Shown piece after piece: positions 1 through 19,883 of a stretch of DNA of 43,199 nt. Location: NCBI GenBank assembly GCA_002269645.1, contig NIVC01004084.1:1-43199 (forward strand), written 5' to 3'. This DNA is from Macrostomum lignano (taxonomy: Eukaryota). Made by a program: the position numbers and the translations under genes. Position 1 is the first letter of the stretch, and every line of letters begins with the position of its first letter. The notes below the pieces were generated by a model. It did no database searches. It was not told the DNA's origin and saw only the letters and a program-made list of their open reading frames with translations.

Positions 1-834
1 AGTGAGCCAGGTGATTGAGCGACTGCATTAAGGGTTGGATAGGCAGCGTAGCTACTTTATCACTGCGAGGCTGGGGTCAGGGAGAAGAGGCTCTCTAGCT
101 GCATTTAGGAGCTTTATACCCCCCTGCAAGTGCGCTTTAGTCAGATGAACGACCTCCCAAGCAGCCCAACTCCCCCCGCCCAGCAAAGTGCTCAATCCAC
201 TCTTCCCCAAGCTCTCTCTCATTCCCTTCGTCTTGCTTTCCCGTTTCTAGTCTGCACCACATTCCATTTGCCCCGCATAGCGGGAACTAAATGCTTTATG
301 CCCGGAGGAGAGGCGTGAGCAAGAGTCTGTCCCAGGCAATGTACTCTTGTACTCGCATCTGTGCACAGTCGCGATGGGACCCCTAAAACGATTGTAAATT
401 ATGAATAAAATCCTGAATAAAGCGGTAATTTGGTGCTGGACACAGAGGTGAGGGAAGACCTCTTCGCCAATAATTGAATTGACGAGATAGCTTACTACTT
501 CTTCCGCACATAATTGCTGACAATCCAATTGGCTCACTTGAAATAATGTTATTGATAACTTCAATTTATTGCGCCGAGTGTTGGACATGAGATGCTATTG
601 AATGTGACAATGAGGGTCGCACTATTACTGAGACAAAATTAAGACTACACACACGCACTGAGTTGACAGCATGATTGATTGACACATCTCAAATTGACGA
701 GACGGACTTTGAGCACCGATGCGACGGCAGGAATAGACCCGTATGAGAACGCGAGCGGGACATCGCCAGCGACATGAGAAGGAGATGCGGGCTGACCTGA
801 GTCGCCTTATGCTCGGTGCACTAGGTGCTGCGAT

Positions 835-1190
835 CTGAGGCTCTGGATTAACTGTGCTGCTCTACAACCCTGAGACCTGGACCCTGACGGATGCCCGGGA
901 GAAGCAACTGGACGCCGTGCACTCTGCGATGCTGCGCTCTGCATTGGCGTGCGCTGTGGCCCCTCGGCTCGGAGCCCAACGTCATGCTCTACGCTAGGGC
1001 CCGCTTAACACGGCCTTTTGACCTGCTGTGCGAGAGGCGACTCAGGCTGGCTGGCCACGTCATCCGGTTGGAAAGTCGCCGCGAGTCGTTTATAGGACCT
1101 GCTGTTGAGGACAGCGCAGGGTCCGGCGAGACGAGGCCAAGGGCGTTTGACGAGCTGCTTCTGAGGGATGCGAGAGCGCCTCCGTTCTGA
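835..1190 (+). mobile_element. RTE-clade non-LTR retrotransposon, 3' fragment (post-RT region), frameshifted
   Basis: Manual translation from ~854 gives VLLYNPETWTLTDAREKQLDAVHSAMLRSAL. After a frameshift the ORF track gives LLCERRLRLAGHVIRLE. Both resemble RTE C-terminal motifs (VLLYGxETW...RRLRLAGH). Confidence 0.75.
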
Positions 1191-1271
1191 ATCTGACTGG
1201 GGGAGCCGACTTTTTGAGAAGTGCGGCCCAAAGGCGTGCGTTCTGACACTCGTGGCCGGCGAGAGGTGTAT

Positions 1272-1316
1272 TTTGTTGTTGTTGTTGTTGTTGTTGTTGT
1301 GTGTGTGTGTGTGTGT
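1272..1316. repeat. (TTG)n-(GT)n compound microsatellite, probably the 3' tail of the minus-strand LINE
   Basis: Seen directly; it abuts the 3' end of the element at 1275-3098. Confidence 0.85.
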
Positions 1317-3098
1317 ATCGGAACGAGTCGAGATCAGGCCAGCCATTCCGGGTGGGTTTCCTCAGGAACTCAAACATCATCATTTCCCTTCCGTAGTCTT
1401 TCCTTCCAGTGAGTCGAGCCGTAGGCAGTCCCATCTGGGGCAGAGGAACAGTGTCCTTGTCGGATTTTCACCGCAGTCTGGGCATGGTTGAGGCTCCTCT
1501 AGCCCAATCTTCTGGCGCAGTAGGGTGTCCATTAGTGTTCGAAGCTGGGCGAGCAACACTGAGTTCTTCCTGCCGAAGTTGCCGGGGTCTCGGGTGGTGC
1601 CGTAGATCTCCGTCAGACGATGGTCTTTCGTGACCGGCTTCCAACGGTTTCTGACTTGTCTATCGAGCACATCAAATTCGATGGATCGTGCTCTGATCCA
1701 GAGAGTCCCCTGCTGGGCCAGGGCGTCGGCGCGCTCATTTCCCGCGATTCGACGTGGCCTGGAATCCATGGAGGTGGATCTTGCATTGGGAACAAGTCTC
1801 CTCAGTCTCTCGATCAGGAGGAAATGGGATCGATTCCTGGAGAGCTTCTCCTTGGCGACGGCCAGGACGGCGGATTTGCTGTCGGTCAGGATGAGGGCGC
1901 TTTCCGGAGATTCCTCCTCGATCAGGTCAAGGACTAGATGGAGGGCTCTTCTCTCTGCTGCCAAGGAGCTACTAAATTCGCCCGCAGCTGCAATCTTTGA
2001 CTTCTCCGCGGCGTTGATCCAGGCCACACAGGCCGCGCCTCCACTCTTTCCAAGTCCGTCCACCGAGCCGTCCGAGTAGATAGTAAGGTCCACTGGTCCG
2101 ATGCTGCGGATTGTCTCAACGGCCTCTTCTTTGATGAGGGGGTCACCCTTAGGAGGCCTGGGCAGCAGAAGACGCCGTCGTGCTTGAGGCGTCTCCATGG
2201 CGGGTGTCTTCTGCTAACGAAGTCCACTCGCGGCACCCTGATGTGCTGGCTTTCGATTCTGGCTTGTTCCCTCCATCCTTTGTTCGCTTTGAGTCTCTTG
2301 GTGATCGACATGTCGCATAGGTCTCTTTTTGGGCTCGGTCTGGGTTCACGTAAAGCTTTTTCCCAATCCCGGACGCACTTGGAGATCGCTGTCTCTGAGA
2401 TGGGGGCGACGCCGGTCTCGAGGTAGATAGCTTCAGAAGGGGTCGACTTAACGAGACCGGCTACCAGTCTGAGACTTTCACGTTCGGCGCGCTCGATTTT
2501 GTCGATGTTGCTTCTGGAGACCCAGGGGATCCAGGCAGCCGCAGCGTGCCAGACGCAGCTCTCGACGATGGCAGTATGGATTTTCTTGAGGTCCTCCTGG
2601 TGCCAGCCCCAGTCGGTGTTGGCCACCGCCCGGATGATCCTGCTTCTTTTTTTCATTTTGAGGACGACGTTTTCAGTGTGCACAGCGAAGGTGAGCCCTC
2701 GATCGATGTGAACTCCAAGGTACTTCAGAGAGTCTTTGCACTCGATGTTTTTACCGTTGATGCTGAGGTGCGGTTTGGCCGTCCCGTCACGGGGGGAGCG
2801 GCTGTAGACGCAGGACTCGCATTTGTTCGGGTTGAGTTCGATTTTGAGGTCGCTCGCCAATCGCTGATCTTGTCGAGGGCGCGTTGGAGGCGGTCAGTGA
2901 CTTCCTCTAGCGAGTCGCCGCTGGTCCAAATGGCCAGGTCATCGGCGAACCCGCCATAGTGGACTCCTTCCACCTCCCTGTCGGCCCAGTCGTTCACATA
3001 CAGAAGGAAGAGGACCGGGGAGCCCACCGCACCTTGGGGGAGCACTGTGGTCATCGCCAAGCCGGATTCCTACTTAACCGCGTATAGGCGCAGCTGCA
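1275..3098 (-). mobile_element. 5'-truncated I-group (Ingi/Nimb-like) non-LTR retrotransposon: RT C-half, RNase H, Cys/His knuckle; frameshifted
   Basis: ORFs 2725-3060 (LPQGAVGSPVLF, GGFADDLAIW), 1934-2860 (LKYLGVHIDRGLTF, WGW, AAAAW) and 1380-2198 (IYSDGS, AERRAL, LTDSKS, GNERADALA = RNase H; CPDCG...LCPRW). Candidate 8-bp TSD TGTATTTT at 1267-1274 and 3099-3106. The exact clade is inferred. Confidence 0.88.
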
Positions 3099-4320: not shown

Positions 4321-4661
4321 GAACGGATAGAGGCAGAGGTAAAGCCAACACGCTGTAGACAGTTGCTTATTAGACAGACTCATTCTGCGGCACCCCAGCC
4401 GACGAGATCAATGCTTGCCTCAAATCTTAATTTAACACGAATTTATTCAATTTTCAAACGTACGAGTATCCTCCTACTGTAACTAATAACAATTAACATA
4501 CTTGAGTTTTGACTTCAAATTTAGGAATTTTTGCAAAAAATAATTGCAGTCCGGGGATTGGAACTAGCGGGTTCAAAATTTGCGGGTTTTACCAGCTACA
4601 CTAATTAATTCTCTACTTAATATCTTGTCCTTTTTTGGTCGGTATAACGTGCTCGTTCGAT

Positions 4662-4866
4662 GCGTGCAAGGTGGGTTCAGCACGCCTGTGTAGCATGAGA
4701 TAGATCAGGCCTACGAGCTAAGGTCTGCGATCCTACACACCTGCACCCCCTCTATTCTGGTGCAGGAATGGCAGGAGAACTCTCTCCAAGCTGACTCGCA
4801 AGCCGACCCAGGGGTTCACGCCCCGCATGTGTTCAAGGCAGCTCCAGGGCTGCTGGACTGACTGGG
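4662..4866 (+). ncRNA. Predicted HDV/CPEB3-like self-cleaving ribozyme at the LINE 5' end
   Basis: Manual fold: P1 4662-4667/4825-4830 (G.U at the cleavage site); P2 4807-4811/4862-4866; P3 4812-4814/4822-4824; L3 UUCACGC; P4 4838-4843/4848-4853; J4/2 C4858-U-G-A. G4662 is the first base after the TSD. Confidence 0.7.
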
Positions 4867-5262
4867 CTCCGGCGGCGGCAACCCATCCGTGGCCTGTTGG
4901 CCAAGTTGGGTACGGGCTCCGCCCGGAAGTGCACCTGTGCGTATCAGGTACCTCTGGCCACGGCTCTGAGGAACAGGTATCACCCTCTGACCTTAACAGG
5001 GTATGCGGCCAGTCCGCAGGCTCCGTAGGCAGTCCTCCTGCTTCCCTCAAGGGCCCAGTGTAGTACCGTGCTGATGGTCCTTTGGTTCGGCCTCTGGTTT
5101 TTCCAAGCCGGGCTCTTAGCCGGGGAGTTTCTCGGTTGCTAGCGGTCGGGCCGGTAAGGGCTTAAGCCACCCCCGGTCGCTACCTCTTGGCCTGGCTGGT
5201 GGGTCTGGGGTTACGGCCCAGCAGCTTCTCTCCTCTAGTCCCCATTCGCCTTTCAGCGACTC

Positions 5263-6462
5263 ATGGAATATTCATTTACGTCCAACGCCCGAGGCTGCTG
5301 GAGCACCAACCGAGGTTGGTACCGCGGCCCAGCCGGACATTCGCAACACCGGAACCTCCGGTGCCTCTCAGTCTGCCGGACGCTCAGGACAACACCGGAG
5401 TGGCTGGACAACAGGACAGCGGACCTCAGATTTCTAAAAAGAAGGCCCGTAGCATTGCTCGCTACAAGGCCTTTTTCCAGCGCAAAGCGGATAAACGGAG
5501 GAATGCGAAAGCCGCCCTCCGGCCACCTCCGAGGAGGATGCCGCTAACTCTGCGAACCCCGCAGATAGCCGGTCAGATGCATCAGGTGCCGCCTAAGCTC
5601 CTGGTGCGGCTGGCCCCTCCCGTGGCGGGACCTCTGCCCGTGTGGAAGCTCCCACGGCCGCGGAGGGATCCAAAGCGTGGGGGCTGGCCAAACCACCAAG
5701 CCGAAGCACACCTATGCGGCTATGGCCAAGAGGCAGCCGGCCCTGGTTATCCAAGGCCAGGAGACGCCTCTTACGGCCGAACAGCTCGACATTATCTGGC
5801 GCAGGTTGGACTCCCACCTGGTCAAGATGGCCTTGAGCGGTACCGCTATTCCAGTCCAAAAGACGAAAGTCGAGGACCAAGCCCTCCATATCCAGCCCGC
5901 CGACAGCCAGTCAGGACAGCAGCTCCTCGAGATGCTGAAAGCCTTCGACTGGGGTACGGAGCTGGAAAACCTGTTTATCTACAGGGAGGACGAGCGACCC
6001 CGGACACACCGGCACCGTGCCTGGATTCCGGCTCGCAGCTACATCACCAAGGCCGACGAGCTGCATCACCTGCTAGTGGCTACCAACCCGGAGCTACCGA
6101 CAAACGGTGTCGCAGTTCACGAGACCATCTCCAAGCCGGGCGGAGACGGTTTCACCGCCATTCTTGGACTGTCGGATAGCTGGATGCTCCGCTATCCGGA
6201 CATGTCCCTCATCTCTGTCGGGCTGTTGCAGATTCAGCTCTTTAGCTTTGAGTCTGACGCCACCCGTCCACCGCCCCCGGAGAAGCGTAAGCGGGCGAGC
6301 GGGGGCTCTGCCAGGCGGAAACGCCCAGGAAAAGAAGCTCCCGTTCGTCACGACCCTTTCGAGGACGTGGACCCGTCAGACGGAAAGCCGCGAAAGCTGC
6401 AGCAACAGGCGGACGTGGAAAGGGCCGGAAACCCGCCCGGAACACTATCCGCTCTGGTCTGA
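5263..6462 (+). pseudogene. LINE ORF1 (frameshifted); C-terminal part resembles the DUF4780-like ORF1 of LOA elements
   Basis: Basic N-terminal frames followed by ORF 5677-6462 (TYAAMAK...LLVATNPELPTNG...SVGLLQIQL). The DUF4780 resemblance is recalled, not computed. Confidence 0.55.
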
Positions 6463-6719
6463 CTCAGCGCGCGAAGCAGCTGCTAGACACCGCCAAGGCC
6501 CACAACCGCAGCAACCCCCATCCCAGTGTCACCACTGCGGCCCCCCGGAAAACCGGGCCGAGAGCAAGAATGCCGCCCAGGTGGAGGCATCGCCCTCGAC
6601 CATGGAGACCATCCGGGAGGAGCCCATGGAACTGGAGCCTGGAGCCATCGGCGAGGCAGAAGAGGCGGCTCTCCTGCACAACTCGCCTTGAGCCGGCAGG
6701 AAGCTGCGCGGACCACTCG

Positions 6720-7420
6720 TGGATTCCCCGGAGTGGACATCCTGCAGCTAAACCTACACCACTGCATCGCGGCCTCGACCAACCTGATGCGGGTGGCAAA
6801 CTTTGTGAAACCGGGCATTTTCCTACCCTAGGAGCCCTGGACAAAGAAAGTTAAGATTCTGAATATTCCTGCTGGTCTTGACTGTTTTCAGGACCCCAAA
6901 AACCCCAGAGCAGCCATGTTCGTTCGTGTCTACCCATCTCAACGCTTGGCACAGACCGGACCTCTCTGACAGAGACCTCTGTGTCATTCAGTCCAACCAC
7001 ATTATCACCAACCGCACGGTCATCATCGCCTCTATCTATATCCCTGGCGATGGCCCCGCGGCTCCACCCAATCTTATCTCCCTCGTGGACTACTGCTCTA
7101 ACCGTAGGTTCGAGCTGCTGGTGGCGGGCGACGTCAACGCTCACCACACCCACTGGGGCAGTAATGCTTCCAACAGCAGAGGCGAGGAACTCCTTGCTTA
7201 CATCTGCACCACCAATACTGAGTTTTGCAACATTGGTGGAACCCCCACCTTTGACAACGGGCGATGGACGGAGGCCCTCGACGTTACCCTCGTCTCCCAT
7301 GGCTTGACTCCTTTAGTCAAGGACTGGGAGGTTTGGGACGAAGAGGAATCTCTGTCTGACCATCGCTTCGTTCGTTTTCGATTGCAATTCTCTTGCCCCA
7401 AGCATCACTTCCTGTGGAAA
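6720..7420 (+). pseudogene. LINE ORF2 apurinic-like endonuclease (APE) domain
   Basis: ILQLNLHHCIAASTNL, IFLP*EPW (in-frame TAG at 6829-6831 where QEPW is expected), ASIYIP, VAGDVNAHH, TPTFDNG, LDVTL, SDHRFVRF. Confidence 0.9.
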
Positions 7421-7815
7421 AGGAACATCCGGAACACTGATTGGACGGCTTTCACGGAAACCCTGAAATGCCAGGCAGATCAGCTGTCTACCGCCGCTCC
7501 AACCGCCTGTCAGGAAGTGGATGACCTTGCAGACTTGCTCAGCAAGACCGTCCTGACAGCCCATGAGGCTTCCAGCTCAGTCCTCTTAAAGCCTACAAAG
7601 GCAAAAAATCCGCCCCCTGGTGGCACCCGGCGCTTGGATCCCTCCGGCGCAAGGCAAAGTGCCTCCAACGGAAAGCTCGCAAGAGCAAGGACCCAGCTGA
7701 CCTGGCCGCCTACCAAGAAGCGATCCGCGACTTTAAGCGTGAAACCAGGAAAGCCAAGTCCGACAAATGGCGCCAATACTGCGCGGAGTTAGAAGGCACC
7801 CGCCCTACTTCACGC

Positions 7816-9400
7816 GTGGTTAAGGCTCTCACCCTCGACAAAATGTCAAAGGTCTCAGTCATTAAAAGACCGGACGGCCGGCTCGCTGAGAACCCTGGGG
7901 AATCGCTGGACATCATGCTCACCAGTTCTTTCCCACGTGCCGCACCGCAGCTAGGCCCACCGGACCACTCTCCGGGCGGACAGATCCTGGCTTCGACCAT
8001 CATTACTAGAGAGAGGACGGCTCGCGCCGCAAAATCTTTCTCTCCTTTCAAGTCACCGGGACCTGACAACATTTATCCTGCCTTCCTCCATGAGGCAGTT
8101 AAAAATGACAGGTTTCTCGGCCTCCTCTGCAACCTCTTCAAGGCCAGCATTACCCTCGGGTACGTGCCAAAAGCCTGGCAAGAGGCTACGGTAGTTTTCG
8201 TACCCAAGCCAGGGAAGGGAGACTATCACTCTGCCAAAGCTTACCGCCCCATCAGTCTGACGTCTTTCTTCCTCAAACTGATGGAACGGCTGGTGCTCTG
8301 GCGCCTTCTCCTCGTAGAGCTGAGGAACTCCCCGCTCTCCCCTAATCAGCACGCCTTTCGTCCTGGACGCTCCATCGAAAGTGCGCCTCACGCCATTGTC
8401 GACAAGCTGGAGCGCGCCGTGCTTGGCAGTGGATACGCGCTGTCGCTTTTCCACGACATTGATGGTGCTTTCAATAATGTGCTCTTTGAAGCCTTTAAGC
8501 GGCCCTGGAATCCCGGGCACGCACGAGCACCTCGCTCGCTGGATCATGTACATGGACTCCCATCGTACTGCCAACTCGATCGCACCTCCTGGGACACTCA
8601 CGCTCCGTGGAAGTCCAGAAAGGCGGACCGCAAGGTGGAGTCCTCAGCCCGATCGTCTGTAGTTTAGTCATGGACGAGCTGCTTTGCAGCCCGCATCCGG
8701 ACCCAGTTCAGAAGGTCGGCTTTGTAGACGATGTTACCGCCACTGTGGCTGGACCATCACCCGCGGTCCTCAGGGACCTCCTTCAAGCCTTCATCCACCG
8801 TGCCGAGCGCTGGGCACAAAGCTGCGGTCTCAGGTTCTCTGAGTCTAAAACCGTGGCTATCATGTTCACCAGCCGCCGAAACTGGAGGATCGAACCGCTC
8901 TCCCTCTATGGCAAACCTGTTGCCATGGAGAAACAAACCAGATATCTGGGCGTCACCCTCGACCACAGGCTGAGCTGGACCCCGCAGTCCAAACCAAAGC
9001 CCGCAAAGCTCTCGCGACTCTCGCGCAGATCCGCAGAGCTTTCGGTGCTACCTGGGGCCTCACCCCGCCGCCTCTGGTGGATTTACACTGCCATTGTTAG
9101 ACCGGCCATCTCCTTCGCCGGCTTCATTTGGAATAGTGCCCTAGAGGTGAAAGGGGTTCTTGCGGTTCTAAATAGGGTGCAAGGCCGCGCTTGTCGAGCT
9201 ATCATGAGCGCGGCTCCCTCTACGCCCTTCACCGGCATGAACTCCTTCTTGGACATTCCCCCCCTCGACCTCTTTGTTAGAGGGGAGGCAATGAAAACCA
9301 CCCGCCGTCTGCTTGACGCGGGTGTCCAAATCCAGAAGCAGTTCGCCTTCAGAAAGCGGAACCTCCGGCGGCCGCATGGTGACCTCAGCCTGCGAGACCT
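7816..9400 (+). pseudogene. LINE ORF2 reverse transcriptase domain (frameshifted near 8500-8640)
   Basis: SPGPDNI, YRPISLTS, QHAFRPGRS, DIDGAFNNV, PQGGVLSP, FVDD, YLGVTLD. Confidence 0.93.
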
Positions 9401-9519
9401 GGAAGCAGCGAGAGGCCTGCTGACCCTCTCGGACGGAATCCCGTCCACGCTCTGCCCTCCGCTCAAATTCAAAACTAGCATTCCACCAAGTCAAGGCAAG
9501 AGACAACTAGAAACCCCAT

Positions 9520-10300
9520 GAAATCCACTGCTTCACTGACGGGTCCCAAATCAACTCCGCCTCTGGCTACGGCTACTGCATCGTGTCTGGAGGGAGAACT
9601 TTGGCGACCTTCTCCCAACACACCGGCACCTGCTCCACCGTCTTCCAGAACGAAGTTCTCGCCATCAGCTCCTGCGCCATGGAGCTGTACAATCAGCGCG
9701 TCTGGGGGAAGGAAATAACCCTCCACTCGGACAGTCAAGCGGCTATAATCCACGCCCTTGAGCGCACAACCACCTGCTCGCGTACAGCTGCAGTCCTCGA
9801 CTGTATCGGGCAGCTCAACCGCTTAGGCGCCTCTAACAAGGTGTCCCTAAGGTGGATCCCCGGGCATTCGGGCCACCCCGGCAACGAGCTGGCCGATCGC
9901 CTAGCCAAGGCTGGCTCGACCGGTTCTTTCTGGTCCCCTGCCCGTGGCCCCCACCCCCATCGCCGTTGTCACCACTCGGGATCAACCAGTGGGTGGCTTC
10001 TAAGCACAGGGAGAGGTGGGCTAACGCCTCCGACTGCCGGCAATCCCGCGTGGTTGTCCCCTGTCCTTCCTCCGCCCCGCGCAGGGCCCTGCTTGGACTC
10101 AACCGCAGGGACATCAGGACGGTGAACATGGCCCTCTCGGGTCATGGTTGCTTTGCCAGGCATCGTCACCTCCAGGGGAAAATCCGCAGTGAGGAATTCC
10201 CTTTCTGCCTCTCCGGTGTCGAGAATGCGGAGCACTTCATCTGTGAATGCCCCGCCTTTACTCAGGACAGGCTCACCTACCTCGGCCCAAACCCGGACCT
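9520..10300 (+). pseudogene. LINE ORF2 RNase H plus C-terminal CCHC knuckle
   Basis: FTDGS (read across the frameshift near 9530), [37 protein letters not shown]; then LSGHGCF...[16 protein letters not shown]. Confidence 0.9.
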
Positions 10301-11042
10301 CTCCGACGTTTTCAGGCCCGAGAATCTCTGCCAGCTCGTCCGTTACCTAAGGGCTACCGGGCGAGCGACAATCCACCTCCTGGACTCTCCGGAGGGGGAT
10401 CGCGCTGCGGACGCCGGCGCCACCGGAACTCCCTGCGCGACACCGCAGCACTATAGCTGCCCGTGGTCGCCAGGGGCTAGCGAAATGGGCGGCAACGCCT
10501 CCTCGCTGTCTCCGGACGCATGGAGCCCCCTGCAGCTAAGTCAAGTAAGTGCTCGTTCGATTCGATAATACCGTTTTAAAAATCCAAGCGCGCTTTCAAA
10601 TGTCATAGTTTTACAACTCTAAGTATTCATTATTTAAAAGTACCCTACATTTTCTAATAGTTATAAAATACACTGAGTCATATTGACTAAACAAGCTTTT
10701 TGCATGAGCCAAACGTACTAGTACTACTACTTGTTTTTTATCGTGAAAAGGATGCGTTTCTAATTTTTTTAACTGGTAATTTCTAAGAAGCTAAATGAGC
10801 GCGTATTTTTAAAGTGGCTAGGCAGGCAACAAAAATTGTAAATTTTATTTGCGCTTATATCGAACTATAATCGTAGCGAAACTTCAACTTTTTGATATTT
10901 TCAGCATTGTTTAATGCGCTCTTCAGTACTGCATCAGTGAATCCCTTAAAAATTTATAATTTTTTGACTCGTTCAATTATTCATACTGTGCTGGCGCTCG
11001 GGTGTTTTAATTGTGTTAACAAGAACAATCACAATGTTATGC

Positions 11043-14000
11043 ATGTTAAATCGCCAAGTTCTAGGTCTAAAATCAATCCATTTAGCATGGTTTAAAAGAT
11101 CTTTTTGCAAGCTTAAGGTGAGTAGATAACTTTTTTACGTTTGAAATCGAAATTTTCCTTAAAAATATTAGTTTTTTAAAGTGTTCTGCCATAATCAGAA
11201 ATAGGGGCCTAGCATAGGCCTATGACTATAGCTATGGAATGGAACAAGAAGTTGGCAACTGCATAAACATTGATGCCTAGGCCTACTACTCTAGAGTCCT
11301 AATGAGCCTAGATTTTGTGAGTTGACAGTAGCAAGTCAACATCAAAGAAATTTAAGTAGCCAATTTGAGCTCAAGTAGGTCTAGGCTAGGTGGGTGCAGC
11401 CAAAACGAAGAGCTTGCGTGCACGGCAGCCGTTCACATAAGCTCAGAATTGCGTGCACGGCGGCTATCTACCTAGTGCTTTATTTGCATGTATGCAGCCG
11501 TACACCTAGTGTTGTAATTGCGTGCACGGCAGCCCTATTGCAGCGCATGGCTTAAGTACGCCAGACGCCTACACAACCTGCGCCACGCTGTGAAATGACT
11601 CACCTGTGAAAGAAACCCTAAAGCAAAATTAACGCAGTTTTGGGTAAACGGCAGGAGTAACTATGACTGTCTTATCCAGCCTAAATGCCTCGGCATCTAA
11701 TTAGTACCGCGCCGCGCCGTACTAATCGCCGCGCGCCATACGCGCCGCGCCGCGCCATATTAGATCCGCGCCGGACACCGTCCGCCAAAATGCCCATGCG
11801 CTGCAATCAGGCACGGCAGCCGGCAATTGGCCGGGACTGGGGCCCTTAAATCCACGCATTGGCATTGCAAACCTAATTAAAAAATATTTTTACTATATTG
11901 TTTTATAATGTTTTATCCCCCGTACACCATGGACTGCAAATGTAATCTTAATTCTTTGTTTTTTTGTTAACTTGAATATTAATTCAAATAGTATATGACT
12001 TACTGTATAAGCCTATAAGATATAGCTCTGCCGTGCACGCAATTCTGAGCTTACGTGAACGGCGGCCGTGCACGCAAGCTCTTCGCAGCCAAAATTGTCA
12101 TATTCAAAATCTTCATATGATGATGACGACTTGAACAAATCTGGAAGACTTAAATGTTTAAATATGGCGATTTTTACCAAAGGCAAAGGTGTATTAATTT
12201 AGGATTTTCCTACCTTCAAGCAAAAATCCCTTGCATGCACCCATAAGTTTATATTAACTGTGTCAATTAATGCTGATTGCTGCATGACTACTACTAAGAC
12301 TAATATATAATAAACAGTAAAGAGATGATGAATATCAAAACTAATGTATGCAAATAAAACTGCCCATATTTTCAAGTTGAGCAGCAGGCTATTCAGTAGA
12401 ACCTGTCCAAAAATACATAGAAGCAGTGTATATTTATATAGCTAAGGGTATATGAACAAATGCATGCTGCTTATATATAGCAGGAAGCCCTTATAAAAAT
12501 CAGACTTTTGTGGCATGAAAGCTAAAATAAGCCACTAACTTTTAAGGCATATGATTTTTTAACACACATTAATGCTTATAGAAGCAAGCAAGTGACACTA
12601 CTTCTGAAGTTCTGGGACACCCCTTGTATTTAGGCTAAATTTTATATCAAAGTAGGCCTACCTTTAAAGCAAACTTTATTGCATACAGCTAGGCTTTGGA
12701 AAGATATTTATATACAATTCATTATCAAAAAGCTATGCCTACTTAATCTTATTAATATTAATTATTTGACTCAACTAAACTACCTAAATATTGAGAAACA
12801 TAAAATAGATTTTGAGATATCAATTATTAGAAGAAAATTCTTATATCATACAAGAATGGCTAGTAATGCATTTACCTTAACTTTAGCCCCCATTATATCT
12901 TACCTTAATATGCATATAGCATGGAAAATACATTTCTTAAGAGTCCTTGACCCCAGGCACTTAAGAGCTTCCCTAGGACCTTTGCACTAAGGTGAAAATA
13001 GTCATTGATTCTTAACTGAAGCCCCCACTACCCTAACAACAGAATGTACTCATGAAATTAAACCTTTATTGGTTAAGTCTCAAATCCCAAGGAATTAAAA
13101 GCTGACATTGCATTGAAAGTGAAAACATTCATTTAACTTTTTGCTCTTATCGAAAATGATATTTTAAAAAAACCCTTTAACAGCCTTTGGTTTGTGCCAG
13201 TCAGCTGCACACCTCCTCAGCCCTGTGGAAGCAGCTGGTCCAGTTCCGCCTATCAGACATTGGCGAAGGTATTCGCCAGGTCACCATTAAGGAGTGGTTT
13301 GTGAAGCCTGGGGATCAGGTGGCCCAGTTTGACAGCATCTGCGAGGTGCAGAGCGACAAAGCTGCCGTCACCATCACTTCCAGGTCTGTGTGCCCAGACT
13401 GCTGCTGTGATCCCTGACAATGAGTTACCACCCTTCTCAGTTGCTGGGCCAACAGCCTCCCAGATCCTCAGTTGCTGGTCCAACAGCCTCCCAGATCCTC
13501 AGTTGCTGGGCCAACAGCCTCCTAGATCCTCAGTTGCTGGGCCAACAGCCTCCCAGATCCTCAGTTGCTGGTCCAACACCCTCCCAGATCCTCAGTTGCT
13601 GGGCCAAAAGCCTCCCAGATCCTCAGTTGCTGGTCCAACAGCCTCCTAGATCCTCAGTTGCTGGTCCAACAGCCTCCTAGATCCTCAGTTGCTGGTCCAA
13701 CAGCCTCCTAGATCCTCAGTTGCTGGGCCAACAGCCTCCTAAATCCTGAGTTGCTGGGCCAACAGCCTCCCAGATCCTCAGTTGCTGGTCCAACAGCCTC
13801 CCAGATTCTCAGTTGCTGGTCCAACACCCTCCCAGATTCTCAGTTGCTGGTCCAACACCCTCTCAGATCCTCAGTTGCTGGCCCAGCTTCCCAGATCCTC
13901 AGTTGCTGGGCCGCGGCCCTCATCGTCCTTACTCTTTATTCCAAAACCCAAACACCCTCAGGTACGACGGCATCATCAAGAAGCTGTACTACGACGTGGA

Positions 14001-16229
14001 CGACACTGGGCACGTCGGCCAGCCTCTGGTAGACATCGAAGTTGAAGAGGCCGAATCCGAGAACAGCGACAGCGAAGACGGCTCTGAAGATGCTGAAGAG
14101 GCCCGAGCTTCCAGCTCCACTGCCAGGCCTGCGGCGACTGCCGCTTCCGGCGGAAGAGTCGGCGGTGGCAGCGGCCGCGCCCTGGCCACCCCGGCCGTTC
14201 GCCGTCTGGCCGCCGAGCACCGGATCGACCTGAGCAGCGTTGCAGGCACCGGGCGGGACGGTCGCGTGCTCAAAGAGGACATTCTGGCCTACATTGCGGG
14301 CCAGCCCACCGCAGCTTCGGCGTCGGCTTCGACAGCGGCGCCAGCGACTCTGCCTCGCGCGCCAGTGTCTGCACCAGCCTCGCCCGCGGCGGCCACATCC
14401 ACACCCGCAGCAGCCGCCGCCGCCGCCGCCATCCCGGCGGTTGCTGCGGAGGACCGCAAGGCGCCAATCCGGGGAGTGCAACGGGCCATGTTCCAGAGCA
14501 TGACCCAGGCGGCACAGATTCCCCACTTCACTTATAGCGATGAAGTTGACCTCACCCGGCTGTTCCAGTGGCGCAAGCGGCTGAACCAGTCGTTGGAAGT
14601 GGCCGGAGGCGGCGGCCTGACGTTTATGCCGTTCTTTTTAAAGGCGATGTCGCTGGCTCTTAGAGAGCAGCCGGTGCTCAATGCTCACCTGATTGAAGAG
14701 GATCATCTGCTTATTAAGGTGAGAGGATTGCCAATGAGATTAAAGTAAGTCTCTAGATCACAGAAGTCGGCCTCTAGATCACATAAATCGGTCTCTAGAT
14801 CACAGAAATCAGTCTTTTAGATCACAGAAATCAATTGTCTCTAGATCACAGAAGTCGGCCTCTAGATCTCAGAAGTCGGCCTCTAGATCAAAAAAATCGA
14901 TCATCTCTAGATCAAAGAAATCAGCTCTAGATCACAGAAATCAATTGTCTCTAGATCACAGAAGTCGGCCTTTAGATCAAAGAAATCGATCATCTCTAGA
15001 TCAAAGAAATCGGTCTCTAGATCACAGAAATCAATTGTCTCTAGATCACAGAAGTCGGCCTCTAGATCACATAAATCGGCCTCTAGATCACATAAATCGG
15101 CCTCTAGATCACATAAATCGGTCCCTAGATCACATAAATCGGTCCCTAGATCACATAAATCGGTCCCTAGATCACATAAATCGGTCCCTAGATCACATAA
15201 ATCGGTCCCTAGATCACAAAAACTCGCTGATTACCCATTTCTAATCACAGGGAAGCTGGCATCTCCATTCGCATCTCCCAAATCTCCATCAATTGCTAGG
15301 CGAGCCACAACATCGGGGTGGCTGTGGACTCTCCGTCAGGCCTCCTGGTGCCCTGCGTGCACTCCGTTGACCAGCTCAGCGTGCTGGAAATTTCTGACGT
15401 CCTTCGCGGCCTCGTAGACGCCGGCCGGTCCGGCAAGCTGACGCCCGCCCAGCTCACTGGCGGCACCATCGCGCTGTCAAACATTGGCAACATCGGCGGC
15501 ACCTACACTAAGCCCGTGATTCAACCGCCGCAGGTAAGCCAAGATTGTAATTTAAAATTTCATGCCGATTCAAGTGTCTTTTCGATACATATCGGATGCA
15601 ACAATATGTCGCTTTTTCTTTAAGTATCTGTACTAAGATTGGTATACAGTTTCACTGAGAAGCGTAACCAAAATCTTTTATCCGATATGTATCGGAAAAA
15701 CACTTTTTCAATGTGTTAGCAAAATAATTTATCCGATATGTAGTATACGTTACTCTAACCGCCTGATTCGTAAATAAATAATTCTTTACCCGATATGTAT
15801 CGAAAGGATACTTTTACAGTGTGTCTGAAACAGGCATTGTCCGCTATATCCGATATGTATCGAAAAGATACTTTTACAGTGAGTCTAAAATAGTCTTTAC
15901 CTGAAATATCCGATATGTATCGAAAAGATACTTTACAAAGTGTCTAAAATAGGCTTTACCCGTTGTACTCAATTACAATAACTATTGATAAACTCACAGA
16001 ATCTCGCAAACGCTTATCTACTCTCGCCCAGGTGTGCATTGGCGCCGTAGGCCGAGCCCGCCCGTTGCCTCGCTTCGATTCCAACGGCTCGGTCACCGCC
16101 GCCCAGATAATGTGCGTGTCCTGGTCAGCCGATCACCGCGTCATCGACGGCGCCACAGTGGCCAGGTTCAGCAACCGGTGGAAGCAGATGCTGGAACAGC
16201 CGGAGCATTTCCTGCTGTACCTGAAATAG
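11043..16229 (+). CDS. DBT: Dihydrolipoamide branched-chain transacylase E2 (BCKDH E2), ~487 aa, 5 exons
   Basis: Exons 11043-11117 (tentative, transit-peptide-like [25 protein letters not shown]), 13184-13383, 13962-14718, 15300-15533, 16032-16229; all GT-AG and phase-consistent (1464 bp). Motifs: [10 protein letters not shown], lipoyl [16 protein letters not shown]...[14 protein letters not shown], catalytic DHRVIDG. Confidence 0.93.
11406..12085. mobile_element. Non-autonomous TIR DNA transposon (680 bp, MULE-like by TSD length)
   Basis: ~62-bp terminal inverted repeats (CGAAGAGCTTGCGTGCACGGC... at 11406-11467; ...GCCGTGCACGCAAGCTCTTCG at 12022-12085), flanked by the 9-bp direct repeat CAGCCAAAA (11397-11405, 12086-12094). 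No ORF. Confidence 0.88.
11642..11704 (+). other. Degenerate 28S rDNA-derived segment (H69-H71, R2/I-PpoI target region) inside the TIR element
   Basis: GGGTAAACGGCAGGAGTAACTATGACTGTCTTATCCAGCCTAAATGCCTCGGCATCTAATTAG versus the conserved 28S GGGTAAACGGCGGGAGTAACTATGACTCTCTTAAGGTAGCCAAATGCCTCGTCATCTAATTAG. Not a functional rRNA gene. Confidence 0.88.
13432..13910. repeat. 31-bp minisatellite (CCTCAGTTGCTGGGCCAACAGCCTCCCAGAT) in DBT intron 2
   Basis: About 15 tandem copies, seen directly. Confidence 0.95.
14750..15220. repeat. ~21-bp minisatellite (CTCTAGATCACATAAATCGGC and variants) in DBT intron 3
   Basis: Tandem copies seen directly. Confidence 0.95.
15571..15960. repeat. Spaced repeat ATCCGATATGTATCGAAAAGATACTT, one inverted plus several direct copies, in DBT intron 4
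   Basis: Inverted copy at 15571-15598; direct copies near 15680, 15731, 15789, 15848 and 15908. Confidence 0.8.
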
Positions 16230-17159: not shown

Positions 17160-17930
17160 TCTTATTGAGCAGCTGTGCTCAGGGCAGGCGCTTGGACAAT
17201 AGACAGTTTGCAAATCTTCAGCTGCTCAGGGCAAGCAGCTTGGGACCATCGACAGTTTGCAAAGCTCATTGAGCGAAATTAGAGAGGGAGGCTTTGGCCC
17301 ATAGACAGTTTGCAAAGCTCATTGAGCGGAATTAGGGAGGGGGCTTGGCCCATAGACAGTTTGCAAAGCTCATTGAGCGAAATTAGAGAGGGAGGCTTTG
17401 GCCCATAGACAGTTTGCAAAGCTCATTGAGCGAAATTAGGGAGGGGGCTTGGCCCATAGACAGTTTGCAAAGCTCATTGAGCGAAATTAGGGAGGGGGGC
17501 TTTGGCCCATAGACAGTTTGCAAAGCTCATTGAGCGAAATTAGGGAGGGGGGCTTTGGCCCATAGACAGTTTGCAAAGCTCATTGAGCGAAATTAGGGAG
17601 GGGGGCTTTGGCCCATAGACAGTTTGCAAAGCTCAATGAGCGAAATTAGAGAGGGAGGCTTTGGCCCATAGACAGTTTGCAAAGCTCATTGAGCGGAATT
17701 AGGGAGGGGGCTTGGCCCATAGACAGTTTGCAAAGCTCATTGAGCGGAATTAGGGAGGGGGCTTGGCCCATAGACAGTTTGCAAAGCTCATTGAGCGAAA
17801 TTAGAGAGGGAGGCTTTGGCCCATAGACAGTTTGCAAAGCTCATTGAGCGGAATTAGGGAGGGGGCTTGGCCCATAGACAGTTTGCAAAGCTCATTGAGC
17901 AGCTGTGCTGAGGGCAGACGGCTTGGCCCA
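17160..17930. repeat. ~51-54-bp minisatellite (GCCCATAGACAGTTTGCAAAGCTCATTGAGCG...)
   Basis: About 14 tandem copies between the convergent DBT and MPP genes. Confidence 0.95.
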
Positions 17931-18984
17931 TATGCACCCGTGTTTGCTTAAAATCAACGAAAACAGCACCATTTAGACAGCTAGCAAATTTTGCGACTTT
18001 TAAAACGGCAATAATGCAGCACAACATATCATACGGAATGTGTTTGCCTGCAAAGTGTTTATTTTATAATGTAGTCATGATAAACGAGAGTTTTACGAGG
18101 TAAACACTAAATAATATTAATATTATTTAATATTCCGTCTGGGGGGTCTAATGAGGTTGAATCAATTAGTAAATAATTAAGTACAAACTTGTACTGATGC
18201 AAAACAAAAGTGCGCATTTAAAAAAGGCTTTAACAAATTATTGCATAAACAAATGATACTGAAATAGAATTTTTACACGTGATAAACGGTTCCTAACAAC
18301 AGTGTTGATTGCTTTGAAATATGAAATTTTATGTCGTCAGTACTAATTATTAGTACAGTTGCTTAAAAGCTACGAGTATTTAGAGGAATTTTTTTTAAAT
18401 TTTATCAACTTTTCAACCAAAGTTGGGATTGTCACGATAGCCGAAATTTTAGAATCTGGAATGAAAAATATGCTTTTTAGAGTTTTGAAATATAATTGGC
18501 ACCGTTTTGACTTAAAACGACATGAAAAGTCCTAATTTTAATTCCCGGAGCAAAATTTGCGCCAATTTAAATTTTCGAATGAAATTTTCGTGATTTTTTA
18601 TTTCAGAATTAAATTGGCACCAATTTGAATTTAAATGAATGGTCGTGATTTTGAACCCCAGAAAAAAATTGGAGCGATTTAGATGTGTGTATGTAATGAA
18701 ATGATAATGAACTTTTAATTTCGCACTGAAATGAGGCCACCAACCAAAGGAAATGGATAAATTATAAGCTGCAAAGGTTACCAAAATAATCAATGAACGT
18801 CATTAAGTGTACGAGCACAAAACGTGCCAATATATAGTGATAAAAACAATGATGACCAAAAAATAAGTTGTTTAACTAATAAATTTTGCCGAAAAAAGAT
18901 TTCAGGTAAATCAATAACCAAAATCAATTATATTCACAGTTAATACATCCGGATATTTAACTGATGAAGCGCACAGGAACGGAG

Positions 18985-19757
18985 CATCAAAGGGGCGCCG
19001 CAATGGGAGCATCAAAGGGCGCCACAATGGGAGCATCAAATGGCACCACAATGGGAGCATCAAAGGGGCGCCACAATGGGAGCATCAAAGGGGCGCCGCA
19101 ATGGGAGCATCAAAGGGGCGCCGCAATGGGAGCATCAAAGGGGCGCCGCAATGGGAGCATCAATGGGGCGCCACAATGGGAGCATCAAAGGGCGCCGCAA
19201 TGGGAGCATCAAAGGGGCGCCGCAATGGGAGCATCAAAGGGGCGCCGCAATGGGAGCATCAAAGGGGCGCCGCAATGGGAGCATCAAAGGGGCGCCGCAA
19301 TGGGAGCATCAAAGGGGCGCCGCAATGGGAGCATCAAAGGGGCGCCACAATGGGAGCATCAAAGGGGCGCCGCAATGGGAGCATCAAAGGGGCGCCGCAA
19401 TGGGAGCATCAAAGGGGCGCCGCAATGGGAGCATCAAAGGGGCGCCGCAATGGGAGCATCAAAGGGGCGCCGCAATGGGAGCATCAAAGGGGCGCCGCAA
19501 TGGGAGCATCAAAGGGGCGCCGCAATGGGAGCATCAAAGGGGCGCCGCAATGGGAGCATCAAAGGGGCGCCGCAATGGGAGCATCAAAGGGGCGCCGCAA
19601 TGGGAGCATCAAAGGGGCGCCGCAATGGGAGCATCAAAGGGGCGCCGCAATGGGAGCATCAAAGGGGCGCCGCAATGGGAGCATCAAAGGGCGCCACAAT
19701 GGGAGCATCAAATGGCACCACAATGGGAGCATCAAAGGGGCGCCGCAATGGGAGCAT
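18985..19757. repeat. 25-bp minisatellite (GGGAGCATCAAAGGGGCGCCGCAAT)
   Basis: About 30 near-identical copies; the three-frame cycling ORFs are consistent with a 25-bp period. Confidence 0.95.
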
Positions 19758-19883
19758 CCACTGCTAAATTTAATGCGACTTGCAGGTGGAAGATGGCAGT
19801 AATTAGACCAGTTTGTTGCACATGCAGGTGCAAAATTAAAGCTGTCGCTAAAAACAGCCAGGTTAGCAATACCTGCTGCCAGA

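What the first reader, a model, noticed from the sequence alone, without database searches (positions are those of the whole stretch)
4662..4866. HDV/CPEB3-type ribozyme fold starting exactly at the first base of a full-length LOA-like LINE
Seen: P1 GCGUGC (4662-4667) pairs with GCAUGU (4825-4830) and has the G.U wobble at the cleavage site. P2 is CCCAG/CUGGG, P3 is GGG/CCC, L3 is UUCACGC, P4 is GCAGCU/GGCUGC, and J4/2 reads C4858-U-G-A immediately before P2. G4831-U4832 follow P1, and a ~140-nt J1/2 insert carries its own hairpins. The predicted cleavage site G4662 is the base right after the independently found 13-bp TSD, which is unlikely by chance. Established: HDV-like ribozymes process the 5' ends of R2, L1Tc/Ingi, some RTE and Baggins (LOA) elements. 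From memory, the mammalian CPEB3 ribozyme has L3 UUCACGU and only one Watson-Crick pair in P1.1, as here. Inference: this family generates its 5' end by self-cleavage from read-through transcripts. A CPEB3-type variant with long J1/2 in this lineage may be undescribed.
Basis: partly seen in the sequence, partly recalled or inferred. Interest (0 to 1): 0.8.

Follow-up and report, generated by a model that had tools for sequence, protein, structure and literature searches.

The report
HDV-like ribozyme at flatworm LINE start
The first 205 bases of a 5.9-kb LINE retrotransposon in the flatworm Macrostomum lignano fold into an HDV-type self-cleaving ribozyme whose predicted cut site is exactly the element's first base; this is a good new example of a mechanism already known from many other LINEs, not a new kind of thing.

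Summary
An exact 13-bp target-site duplication (4649-4661 and 10549-10561) brackets a 5887-bp LINE (4662-10548) encoding an ORF1, then endonuclease, reverse transcriptase and RNase H; its ORF2 is frameshifted.

The residues that the papers read here treat as conserved are all there: the G4662·U4830 wobble at the cut site, the L3 U and G, the P1.1 C-G pair, catalytic C4858, and A4861.

Unconstrained folding of the exact 205-nt RNA recovers P1. Folding a slightly longer RNA recovers P2 and P4.

The 3' core alone is no rarer than chance (about 3 per window in shuffles). What is improbable is that P1 starts exactly at the TSD boundary (about 3-6 x 10^-5 per position).

Distant LINE relatives from metagenomes (APE 33-38% identical) also carry HDV-like ribozymes upstream of ORF1 or the APE domain: two complete folds (L004, L046) and two partial ones (L023, L034).

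Rfam finds nothing, but it also misses the complete L004 ribozyme, so that negative says little. No second copy of this family was reachable, so within-family covariation is untested, and cleavage itself cannot be shown in silico.

A long structured J1/2 and a CPEB3-like L3/P1.1 are both already described. Verdict: a new member of a known kind, of moderate interest.

The parts
4649..4661 (+). 5' copy of the target-site duplication, GTGCTCGTTCGAT
   Evidence: Exact 13-mer found only here and at 10549-10561. The neighbouring bases differ on both sides.
10549..10561 (+). 3' copy of the target-site duplication
4662..10548 (+). LINE (non-LTR retrotransposon), 5887 bp. It has no poly(A) and ends in ...CTAAGTCAAGTAA.
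   Evidence: Bounded by the TSD. GC-rich against an AT-rich flank. Only copy in the window.
4662..4866 (+). HDV-like ribozyme, minimal extent from P1 to P2'. Predicted scission is between U4661 and G4662.
4662..4667 (+). P1 5' strand, GCGUGC. G4662 is the +1 nucleotide.
   Evidence: In the unconstrained MFE of the 170-nt and 205-nt RNAs it pairs with 4830-4825. Duplex energy -6.2 kcal/mol.
4668..4806 (+). J1/2 peripheral domain (P1.2-like), 139 nt. Closed by 4671-4676/4794-4799 and 4678-4681/4790-4793, with three inner hairpins.
   Evidence: -52.6 kcal/mol, z = -2.45. The same fold appears within the longer RNAs.
4802..4811 (+). P2 5' strand: CCCAG 4807-4811, plus the extension GCCG 4802-4805
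   Evidence: Duplex with the extension is -13.5 kcal/mol.
4812..4824 (+). P3 (GGG 4812-4814 / CCC 4822-4824) enclosing L3 UUCACGC 4815-4821. U4815 and G4820 occupy the positions of the conserved reverse-wobble U and G. C4817 is the P1.1 partner.
   Evidence: Read directly. Residue roles come from PMC4836649 and PMC3774820.
4825..4830 (+). P1 3' strand, GCAUGU. U4830 forms the G.U wobble with G4662.
4831..4832 (+). P1.1 3' side. G4831 pairs with C4817. U4832 lies opposite U4816, as in the CPEB3 ribozyme.
   Evidence: CPEB3 comparison from PMC4836649.
4833..4856 (+). P4 hairpin: GCAGCU 4838-4843 / GGCUGC 4848-4853, loop CCAG, extended by 4833-4835/4854-4856 with an AG bulge
   Evidence: -11.5 kcal/mol for the region.
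4858..4861 (+). J4/2, CUGA. C4858 is the predicted catalytic cytosine and A4861 the constrained A.
   Evidence: The 4-nt spacing matches CPEB3 C57-A60. Catalytic C plus a constrained A are described in PMC3774820.
4862..4873 (+). P2 3' strand: CUGGG 4862-4866, plus the extension CGGC 4870-4873
5722..6462 (+). ORF1 (246 aa from the first ATG), weakly DUF4780-like
   Evidence: Pfam DUF4780 E = 0.017, below the curated cut-off. No homologues in the protein database.
6863..10122 (+). ORF2 remnants in three frames: APE 6863-7789, RT 7567-8664 and 8499-9518, RNase H 9511-10122. At least 3 frameshifts.
   Evidence: Pfam Exo_endo_phos_2 3.9e-19, RVT_1 2.3e-9 and 8.7e-13, RNase_H 4.6e-16. Frames.

Best explanation
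Bases 4662-4866 encode an HDV-like (nested double-pseudoknot) self-cleaving ribozyme that forms the 5' terminus of a LINE in Macrostomum lignano.

Proposed mechanism. When a source copy is transcribed as part of a longer RNA (read-through, host intron, or upstream promoter), four things happen:
- P1 (4662-4667/4825-4830) and P2 (4807-4811/4862-4866) form the outer pseudoknot.
- P3/L3 and the C4817-G4831 pair (P1.1) form the inner pseudoknot.
- The structured 139-nt J1/2 domain holds the distal ends of P1 and P2 together.
- C4858 in J4/2 acts as general acid, with a Mg2+ positioned by the L3 U4815.G4820 pair and the G4662.U4830 wobble.

The chain is cut between U4661 and G4662. This yields an element RNA that begins with a 5'-OH on G4662 and carries no upstream sequence. 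That RNA is then translated and copied by target-primed reverse transcription. A full-length insertion would therefore begin at G4662 directly after the target-site duplication, as seen here.

What is shown: the fold, the conserved residues, the exact coincidence with the TSD boundary, and the presence of the same device in distant relatives.

What is inferred: catalysis, its role in 5'-end formation, and any IRES-like or protein-binding role of the folded 5' end.

This particular copy is a decaying insertion with a frameshifted ORF2. The claim therefore concerns the family, of which this copy preserves the ribozyme sequence.
For: 1. The TSD is exact and cannot be extended, so the element starts at G4662.

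2. All five paired elements occur in the correct 5'-to-3' order with the correct junctions. They satisfy the criteria published for retrotransposon HDV-like ribozymes: P1 of 6-7 bp, P2 of at least 5 bp, a variable P4, J1/4 of 0-2 nt, a catalytic C plus a constrained A in J4/2, and a conserved L3 G that wobbles with an L3 U (PMC3774820).

3. Thermodynamic folding with no constraints pairs nt 1-6 with 4830-4825 in the 170-nt and 205-nt RNAs. It forms P2, the P2 extension, P3 and P4 in the 219-nt RNA.

4. Full descriptor matches occur at 5.8e-5 per position, or 2.7e-5 with a G.U first pair, across 873 kb. Independently, (6/16)^6 = 0.0028 for P1 times about 0.0175 for a core within 250 nt gives about 5e-5.

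5. Relatives found through the APE domain (33-38% identity; for L004, for the rest) carry HDV-like ribozymes on the same strand, upstream of ORF1 or the APE domain:
- L004: P1 GGUGGC/GCCACU, P2 UGUCA/UGACA, P3 GCC/GGC, L3 UCCGCGU, then GG, P4 CUGCA/UGCAG, J4/2 CUAA.
- L046: P1 GGUGAUC/GAUCACU, J1/2 of about 160 nt, P2 GUACU/AGUGC, L3 UCCACGUU, J4/2 CCAA.
- L023 and L034: partial. Their 8-bp P1 helices differ by two fully compensated pairs.

6. The L3/P1.1 configuration matches the active CPEB3 ribozyme.

7. Structured J1/2 domains are known to accelerate such ribozymes (PMC4908430).
Against: - No Rfam HDV-like family matches, even at E <= 10 on the 79-nt core. This is weakened because Rfam also misses the complete L004 ribozyme.
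- The 3' core alone occurs at the chance rate.
- No second copy of this family could be obtained. The allelic locus has the whole ribozyme deleted. Within-family covariation and uniformity of 5' ends are therefore untested.
- P1 has two G.U pairs (-6.2 kcal/mol). It competes with a perfect local hairpin, GCGUGC/GCACGC 4680-4685 (-8.3 kcal/mol as a hairpin), that forms first in short nascent RNAs.
- J4/2 is CUGA, whereas CPEB3 has two adenines there.
- In this particular flank an alternative P1 partner, ACGUGC, lies at 4647.
- No experimental data.
Confidence: 0.8

Rival explanations
1. Chance fold. The 5' end at G4662 is set by something else, such as an internal Pol II promoter that initiates at +1 (as in jockey/I-type LINEs) or simply the end of the template RNA. 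The HDV-like pairing scheme is then a coincidence in GC-rich sequence.
For: - The relaxed 3' core occurs about 3 times per window in shuffles, equal to the observed count.
- A 6-nt P1 partner somewhere within 250 nt is expected about 0.7 times by chance, and a second one does exist at 4647.
- There is no Rfam hit.
Against: - The match has to start at one pre-specified base, with a background of 3-6e-5 per position.
- MFE folding finds P1 and P2 independently.
- All conserved L3, P1.1 and J4/2 residues are present.
- Relatives carry the same device.
- A promoter and a ribozyme are not mutually exclusive: the same first 77 nt of L1Tc are reported to hold both an internal promoter and a ribozyme (PMC3383444, abstract).
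Confidence: 0.07
2. Relic ribozyme. The family once used an HDV-like ribozyme, but this copy, or the recent family, is catalytically dead or very slow. The conserved fold would then serve mainly as a 5'-UTR platform for translation initiation or ORF-protein binding, as proposed for R2.
For: - The copy is decaying: ORF2 has at least 3 frameshifts, and the allelic copy carries different indels and large deletions.
- P1 has two G.U pairs and P1.1 only one Watson-Crick pair.
- A competing 5' hairpin exists.
- IRES-like and protein-binding roles of R2 ribozymes are described (PMC6765202).
Against: - The insertion itself starts at the predicted cleavage site, so its template RNA ended exactly there when it inserted.
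- None of the residues known to abolish activity when changed (L3 C and G, catalytic C) is altered.
- CPEB3 is active with the same L3/P1.1 arrangement.
Confidence: 0.1
3. A different ribozyme class or structured RNA (hammerhead, twister, an internal promoter element, tRNA-like) occupies the 5' end.
For: None found. Considered because other retroelements use hammerheads.
Against: No Rfam family of any kind reaches even E <= 10 in 4560-4960, nor the gathering score anywhere in the window. The helices present fit the HDV topology.
Confidence: 0.02

Closest known systems
R2 / R4 / Dong retrotransposon HDV-like ribozymes (Eickbush and Eickbush; PMC3774820)
   Same: - A double-pseudoknot ribozyme at the 5' end of a non-LTR retrotransposon that releases the element RNA from a co-transcript.
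- P1 of 6-7 bp, P2 of at least 5 bp, a variable P4.
- A conserved L3 G and U, a catalytic C and a constrained A.
- Long J1/2 loops (216-498 nt in silkmoths).
- For R4 and Dong, cleavage at the element's first base.
   Different: R2 is site-specific in 28S rDNA, has a single ORF with a restriction-like endonuclease, and often cleaves upstream within the 28S sequence. Here the element has an APE, an RNase H and an ORF1, inserts at a non-rDNA site with a 13-bp TSD, and no sequence similarity to R2 was shown.
baggins (LOA clade) and RTE ribozymes (Ruminski et al. 2011, as summarised in PMC6765202)
   Same: [quoted passage not shown]
   Different: The primary paper is not held in the library, so sequences and J1/2 architecture could not be compared. 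Clade membership of the window element (LOA or otherwise) was not tested.
Mosquito drz-Agam-2 ribozymes with a structured J1/2 (P1.2) domain (PMC4908430)
   Same: A large, stably folded insert between P1 and P2 together with an extended P2. The published model is that the domain 'pinches' P1 and P2 together and speeds cleavage up to about 1000-fold. The window has a closed 139-nt J1/2 domain and a P2 extension of 5 + 4 bp.
   Different: The window's domain is a multibranch structure rather than a single helix. No sequence relationship is shown and activity is untested.
Mammalian CPEB3 ribozyme
   Same: L3 UUCACGC versus UUCACGU (6 of 7 identical), a P1.1 of one C-G pair plus U.U, a 4-nt J4/2 starting with the catalytic C, and a G.U wobble at the cleavage site.
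   Different: CPEB3 is a 68-nt intronic ribozyme with a short J1/2, conserved in mammals and not linked to a retrotransposon. No Rfam CPEB3 match was found here. The resemblance is confined to the core. Relatives of this LINE have the UCC/GG type instead.
L1Tc / ingi ribozyme (L1TcRz)
   Same: An HDV-like ribozyme in the first nucleotides of a dispersed APE-type LINE, acting co-transcriptionally (PMC3185411, abstract; summary).
   Different: L1TcRz is 77 nt, occurs in trypanosomatids, and overlaps an internal promoter. There is no long J1/2.

Membership tests
HDV-like self-cleaving ribozymes (structural family) | Nested double pseudoknot with the strand order P1-J1/2-P2-P3-L3-P3'-P1'-P1.1-P4-P4'-J4/2-P2' | tested here: met
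   Read directly. Found by my own descriptor. P1 appears in the unconstrained MFE, and P2, P3 and P4 in the unconstrained and constrained MFE.
HDV-like self-cleaving ribozymes (structural family) | Cleavage site at the first nucleotide of P1, usually closed by a G.U wobble | tested here: met
   G4662.U4830 is present, and G4662 is the first base after the TSD. The sequence is consistent with this; scission itself is not shown.
HDV-like self-cleaving ribozymes (structural family) | Catalytic cytosine in J4/2 plus a constrained A next to P2' | tested here: met
   C4858-U-G-A4861 lies directly 5' of P2', with the same 4-nt spacing as CPEB3 C57-A60.
HDV-like self-cleaving ribozymes (structural family) | L3 with a conserved U and G (reverse wobble) and a C that pairs with the G 3' of P1 (P1.1) | tested here: met
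   U4815, G4820 and C4817-G4831 are present. The second P1.1 position is U.U, as in CPEB3.
HDV-like self-cleaving ribozymes (structural family) | Covariation supporting P1-P4 among homologous copies | not testable with these tools
   No other copy of the family exists in the window or in the reachable collections. The allele has the region deleted. Only cross-family analogues are available.
HDV-like self-cleaving ribozymes (structural family) | Mg2+-dependent self-scission yielding 2',3'-cyclic phosphate and 5'-OH ends | not testable with these tools
   Requires an experiment.
Rfam HDV-like families (HDV_ribozyme, CPEB3_ribozyme, drz-Agam and similar) | Covariance-model score at or above the gathering threshold | tested here: not met
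   No hit at the gathering score or at E <= 10. As a control, the complete L004 ribozyme is also missed, so these models do not detect ribozymes of this kind.
CPEB3 ribozyme family (mammalian) | Sequence homology and conserved intronic location in CPEB3 | tested here: not met
   No Rfam match. The host is a flatworm and the context is a LINE 5' end. Only the L3/P1.1 core resembles CPEB3.
LOA clade of non-LTR retrotransposons | Placement of the RT domain within LOA in a phylogeny with reference elements | not tested
   No reference LINE set is available. Only the APE + RT + RNase H domain order and a sub-threshold DUF4780 ORF1 match are shown, and these fit several clades.
Non-LTR retrotransposon (LINE), full-length insertion | TSD-flanked unit with ORF1 and an APE-RT(-RNase H) ORF2 | tested here: met
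   ORF2 is disrupted by at least 3 frameshifts, so the copy is not autonomous.

The most novel reading that the evidence does not exclude
The large closed J1/2 domain is more than a passive spacer. It would be a conserved functional module of a distinct subclass of LINE ribozymes, either required for activity (a 'pinch' domain or protein/ribosome platform) or part of a co-transcriptional switch. In the switch version, the early 5' hairpin GCGUGC/GCACGC (4662-4667/4680-4685) must be displaced by folding of the domain before P1 can form and cleavage can occur. One hint is the identical AAGGUG directly after P1 in the window and in the unrelated metagenomic element L046, which also has a J1/2 of about 160 nt.
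Probability: 0.1. Interest if true: 0.5.

Novelty: new member of a known kind. Interest (0 to 1): 0.35.

Why it matters
This finding adds a free-living flatworm (Macrostomum lignano, a regeneration and stem-cell model) and an RNase H-bearing APE-type LINE to the elements that appear to make their 5' ends with an HDV-like ribozyme.

Together with the metagenomic relatives, it supports the view that this device is widespread in dispersed LINEs and is badly under-detected by Rfam-type models. Those models miss both the window ribozyme and the complete L004 ribozyme.

In practice it gives an exact, testable 5' boundary for annotating this LINE family. It also provides a natural ribozyme with a large structured J1/2 domain for folding and kinetic studies. 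It does not change the current understanding of the mechanism.

Tried and rejected
- **Rfam.** Searched the whole window at the gathering score, 4560-4960 and 4798-4876 at E <= 10, and four relatives at E <= 10. No HDV-like hit anywhere. Judged uninformative, because the complete L004 ribozyme is missed too.
- **Other copies of the family.**
  - blastn and tblastn within the window found none.
  - ORF1 against the 5.8-billion-protein set found none.
  - The RT fragment gave only hits of 55% identity or less.
  - The exact-core DNA pattern in metagenome contigs gave 0 hits.
  - Genome contigs gave one locus with no motif.
- **Allelic locus as an empty site or second copy.** The M. lignano allelic locus L086 carries the same insertion, but window 4472-5405 is deleted, which removes the ribozyme.
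- **Uninformative loci.** L001, L002, L003 and L005 have truncated elements or too little upstream sequence.
- **Own covariance model.** I tried to build one from CPEB3, L004 and L046 cores in order to score the window independently. MAFFT could not align the 3' halves and a hand alignment cannot be supplied, so this was abandoned.
- **P2 and J4/2 of L023 and L034.** No consistent scheme was found. They are reported as partial matches only.
- **Primary papers.** Ruminski 2011, Webb 2009 and Eickbush 2010 are not held in the library.
- **Literature on Macrostomum or flatworm HDV-like ribozymes.** Nothing relevant was found.
- **Upstream ACGUGC (4647) as the true P1.** Rejected, because it lies in insertion-specific flank and about 0.7 such matches are expected by chance in 250 nt.

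Full report
**What is in the window.** An exact 13-mer, GTGCTCGTTCGAT, occurs only at 4649-4661 and 10549-10561. The bases next to the two copies differ on both sides, so the duplication cannot be extended and the inserted unit is exactly 4662-10548 (5887 bp). The unit is GC-rich within AT-rich flanks.

It encodes an ORF1-like protein (5722-6462) followed by APE endonuclease, reverse transcriptase and RNase H domains. Pfam E-values are 3.9e-19, 2.3e-9 and 8.7e-13, and 4.6e-16 respectively. These domains lie in three different frames. The element is therefore full-length in extent, but its ORF2 carries at least three frameshifts. It ends without poly(A) in ...CTAAGTCAAGTAA.

**Host and allele.** A neighbouring exon (13813-14748, branched-chain 2-oxoacid dehydrogenase E2) is 98% identical to a Macrostomum lignano protein, so the window comes from this flatworm. 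The corresponding locus in assembly GCA_002269645.1 (L086) carries the same insertion at 99% identity. However, it has lost window 4472-5405, which contains the whole ribozyme, and also 5566-6829. Its frameshifts sit at different places. It is therefore neither an empty site nor an independent copy.

**The fold.** Reading 5' to 3':
- P1 GCGUGC 4662-4667
- a 139-nt J1/2
- P2 CCCAG 4807-4811
- P3 GGG 4812-4814
- L3 UUCACGC 4815-4821
- P3' CCC 4822-4824
- P1' GCAUGU 4825-4830
- G4831 and U4832
- P4 GCAGCU/GGCUGC 4838-4843/4848-4853
- C4858-U-G-A4861
- P2' CUGGG 4862-4866

This is the strand order of the HDV-type nested double pseudoknot. P1 closes with the G4662.U4830 wobble at the predicted cleavage site. 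C4817 can pair with G4831 (P1.1), with U4816 opposite U4832. U4815 and G4820 occupy the positions of the conserved L3 reverse wobble. C4858 sits four nucleotides before P2'.

**Agreement with published criteria.** These features match what is published for retrotransposon ribozymes: P1 of 6-7 bp, P2 of at least 5 bp, a variable P4, J1/4 of 0-2 nt, and a catalytic C plus a constrained A. The L3 G and C are also the residues whose change goes with loss of activity (PMC3774820). The fold also matches the CPEB3 ribozyme, for which the NMR paper gives U20, C22, A23 and G25 in L3, a P1.1 of one G-C plus a U-U, a 4-nt J4/2 from C57 to A60, and G1.U36 (PMC4836649).

**Independent folding.**
- Unconstrained MFE folding of the 170-nt RNA and of the exact 205-nt RNA pairs nucleotides 1-6 with 4830-4825. 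This is P1, together with the J1/2 domain, P3 and P4.
- Folding 4662-4880 instead yields P2, a 4-bp P2 extension (4802-4805/4870-4873), P3 and an extended P4.
- The J1/2 insert folds as one closed multibranch domain: -52.6 kcal/mol, z = -2.45, 2 of 200 shuffles as good.

One complication is that GCGUGC also has a perfect complement at 4680-4685. That hairpin (-8.3 kcal/mol) dominates the MFE of the first 30-60 nt, but the J1/2 domain and P1 replace it in longer RNAs.

**Is it more than chance?** I wrote a descriptor requiring:
- P2 of 5 bp directly adjoining P3;
- P3 of 3 Watson-Crick pairs;
- L3 of 7-8 nt with C at position 3;
- P1' of 6-7 nt followed by G;
- P4 of at least 4 bp;
- C-N-N-A immediately before P2'.

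The 3' core alone is not special. There are 3 in the window against 2.98 +/- 1.9 in block-wise dinucleotide shuffles, and 0.07 per kb in shuffles of the element's first kilobase. A 6-nt P1 partner somewhere upstream is also unremarkable, and a second one (ACGUGC, 4647) lies in the flank.

The unlikely part is the coincidence with the TSD boundary. Across 873 kb of real sequence, complete matches begin at 5.8e-5 of positions, or 2.7e-5 with a G.U first pair. That count includes the true positives and a microsatellite artefact.

**Rfam.** No HDV-like family is hit at the gathering score or at E <= 10, even on the isolated core. As a control I searched four relatives. Rfam also misses the complete L004 ribozyme, whose J1/2 is only 41 nt. 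The Rfam negative is recorded as a failed membership test for those specific families, but it says little about the structural class.

**Relatives.** No second copy of the family could be found in the window or in any reachable collection. L004 was reached from an ORF2 homologue, P0012 (35% identical). An alignment of APE domains then recovered 80 metagenomic loci at 32-46% identity.

Five loci, from four independent insertions (L079 is the same locus as L004), carry the P3-L3-P3'-P1'-G motif with a matching G-initiated P1. In each the motif is on the coding strand and upstream of the APE domain.
- **L004.** P1 GGUGGC at 2160, P2 UGUCA/UGACA, P3 GCC/GGC, L3 UCCGCGU, then GG, P4 CUGCA/UGCAG, J4/2 CUAA. 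The ribozyme lies about 400 nt upstream of a DUF4780 ORF1.
- **L046.** P1 GGUGAUC at 45, J1/2 of about 160 nt, P2 GUACU/AGUGC, P3 ACC/GGU, L3 UCCACGUU, then GG, an 8-bp P4, J4/2 CCAA.
- **L023 and L034.** Their 8-bp P1 helices, GGCUGGCA/UGCCGGCU and GGUCGACA/UGUCGACU, differ by two fully compensated pairs. In both, P1 starts where the AT-rich flank ends. I could not resolve their P2 and J4/2.

The same motif occurs at background level on the opposite strands (12 versus 9 hits). The signal therefore lies in the positions of the hits, not in their number. These loci are analogues in different families, not homologous copies. They show that the device is used in this part of the LINE tree, but they do not provide covariation for the window's own helices.

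**Comparison with what is known.** HDV-like ribozymes at LINE 5' ends are established for R2, R4, Dong, baggins, RTE and L1Tc (PMC3774820, PMC6765202, PMC3185411). Long J1/2 inserts are also established: 216-498 nt in silkmoth R2, part of which is needed for activity, and the structured P1.2 domain plus extended P2 of mosquito drz-Agam-2, which accelerates cleavage by up to about three orders of magnitude (PMC4908430).

The window's combination is therefore a new assortment of published features in a new host and element. It joins a CPEB3-like L3 and P1.1 with a closed 139-nt J1/2 domain and an extended P2. I found no paper linking Macrostomum or other flatworm dispersed LINEs to HDV-like ribozymes, although planarian R2 is in the R2 survey.

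'LOA-like' remains unverified. Only the APE-RT-RNase H architecture and a sub-threshold DUF4780 match for ORF1 (E = 0.017) are shown.

**Verdict.**
I put 0.8 on the family encoding an HDV-like ribozyme that defines its 5' end.
- The novelty claim is overstated.
- The finding is a new member of a known kind, with interest of about 0.35.
- The decisive tests are all feasible but outside these tools: alignment of genomic copies, in vitro cleavage with a C4858U control, and 5'-OH mapping in worms.

Noticed in passing
window 4662-4685: The P1 5' strand GCGUGC has a perfect 6-bp complement, GCACGC, at 4680-4685. This hairpin is the MFE of the first 30-60 nt, but the J1/2 domain and P1 replace it in the 170-nt and 205-nt RNAs. 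It could be a co-transcriptional kinetic trap or switch.
   Followed up: partly
window 4668-4673; L046 52-57: The hexamer AAGGUG follows P1 directly both in the window ribozyme and in the unrelated metagenomic LINE ribozyme L046, which also has a long J1/2 (about 160 nt). L004 has CAAAGUA at the same place.
   Followed up: no
L086 5440-5830 (M. lignano NIVC01001544.1) versus window 4472-6829: The allelic or homeologous locus carries the same LINE insertion at 99% identity. It lacks window 4472-5405 (190 bp of flank plus the first 744 bp of the LINE, including the ribozyme) and 5566-6829. The two copies have frameshifts at different positions.
   Followed up: yes
window 10530-10548; L004 2140-2159: The LINE has no poly(A) and essentially no 3' UTR. 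Its last reading frame runs to the end of the element, which finishes in ...CTAAGTCAAGTAA. L004 has TAAGTCAA 5-12 nt upstream of its ribozyme cleavage site, which might mark a tandem junction between a 3' end and a 5' end.
   Followed up: no
window 1-3000, minus strand: A second LINE fragment lies here, with RNase H at 1380-2198 (Pfam 4.9e-7). It shows no detectable protein similarity to the main LINE, and its 5' part is apparently missing.
   Followed up: partly
window 13436-43199: The window is very rich in minisatellites: 31 bp x15 at 13436-13912, overlapping the start of the DBT-like reading frame (13813-14748); 53 bp at 17238-17900; 25 bp x31 at 18981-19758; 24 bp at 20458-20955; 21 bp x118 at 21386-23858; 24 bp x41 at 26670-27658; 19 bp x95 at 29329-31123; and others. 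Several long 'ORFs' (for example 21298-23769) overlap these repeats and are probably artefacts of them.
   Followed up: partly
L023 217-242; L034 275-300: A 26-nt block, CU[GA]CGU[UC]AGCUAAGGG[UG]CUG[UC]AUGG, is conserved between two otherwise dissimilar LINE 5' regions, 3' of their P1.1. It contains a C-UAA-GGG string that resembles a J4/2-P2' junction, but no matching P2 5' strand was found.
   Followed up: partly
window 4640-4661 and 10549-10573: The reconstructed target site, CGGTATAAC-GTGCTCGTTCGAT-TCGATAATACCG, has inverted ends (CGGTAT...ATACCG). The LINE may therefore have inserted into a small palindromic or repeat element.
   Followed up: no
window 10548-11034: By alignment to the annotated gene in L086, the LINE's 3' end lies about 490 bp upstream of, and on the same strand as, the start of the DBT-like gene.
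   Followed up: no
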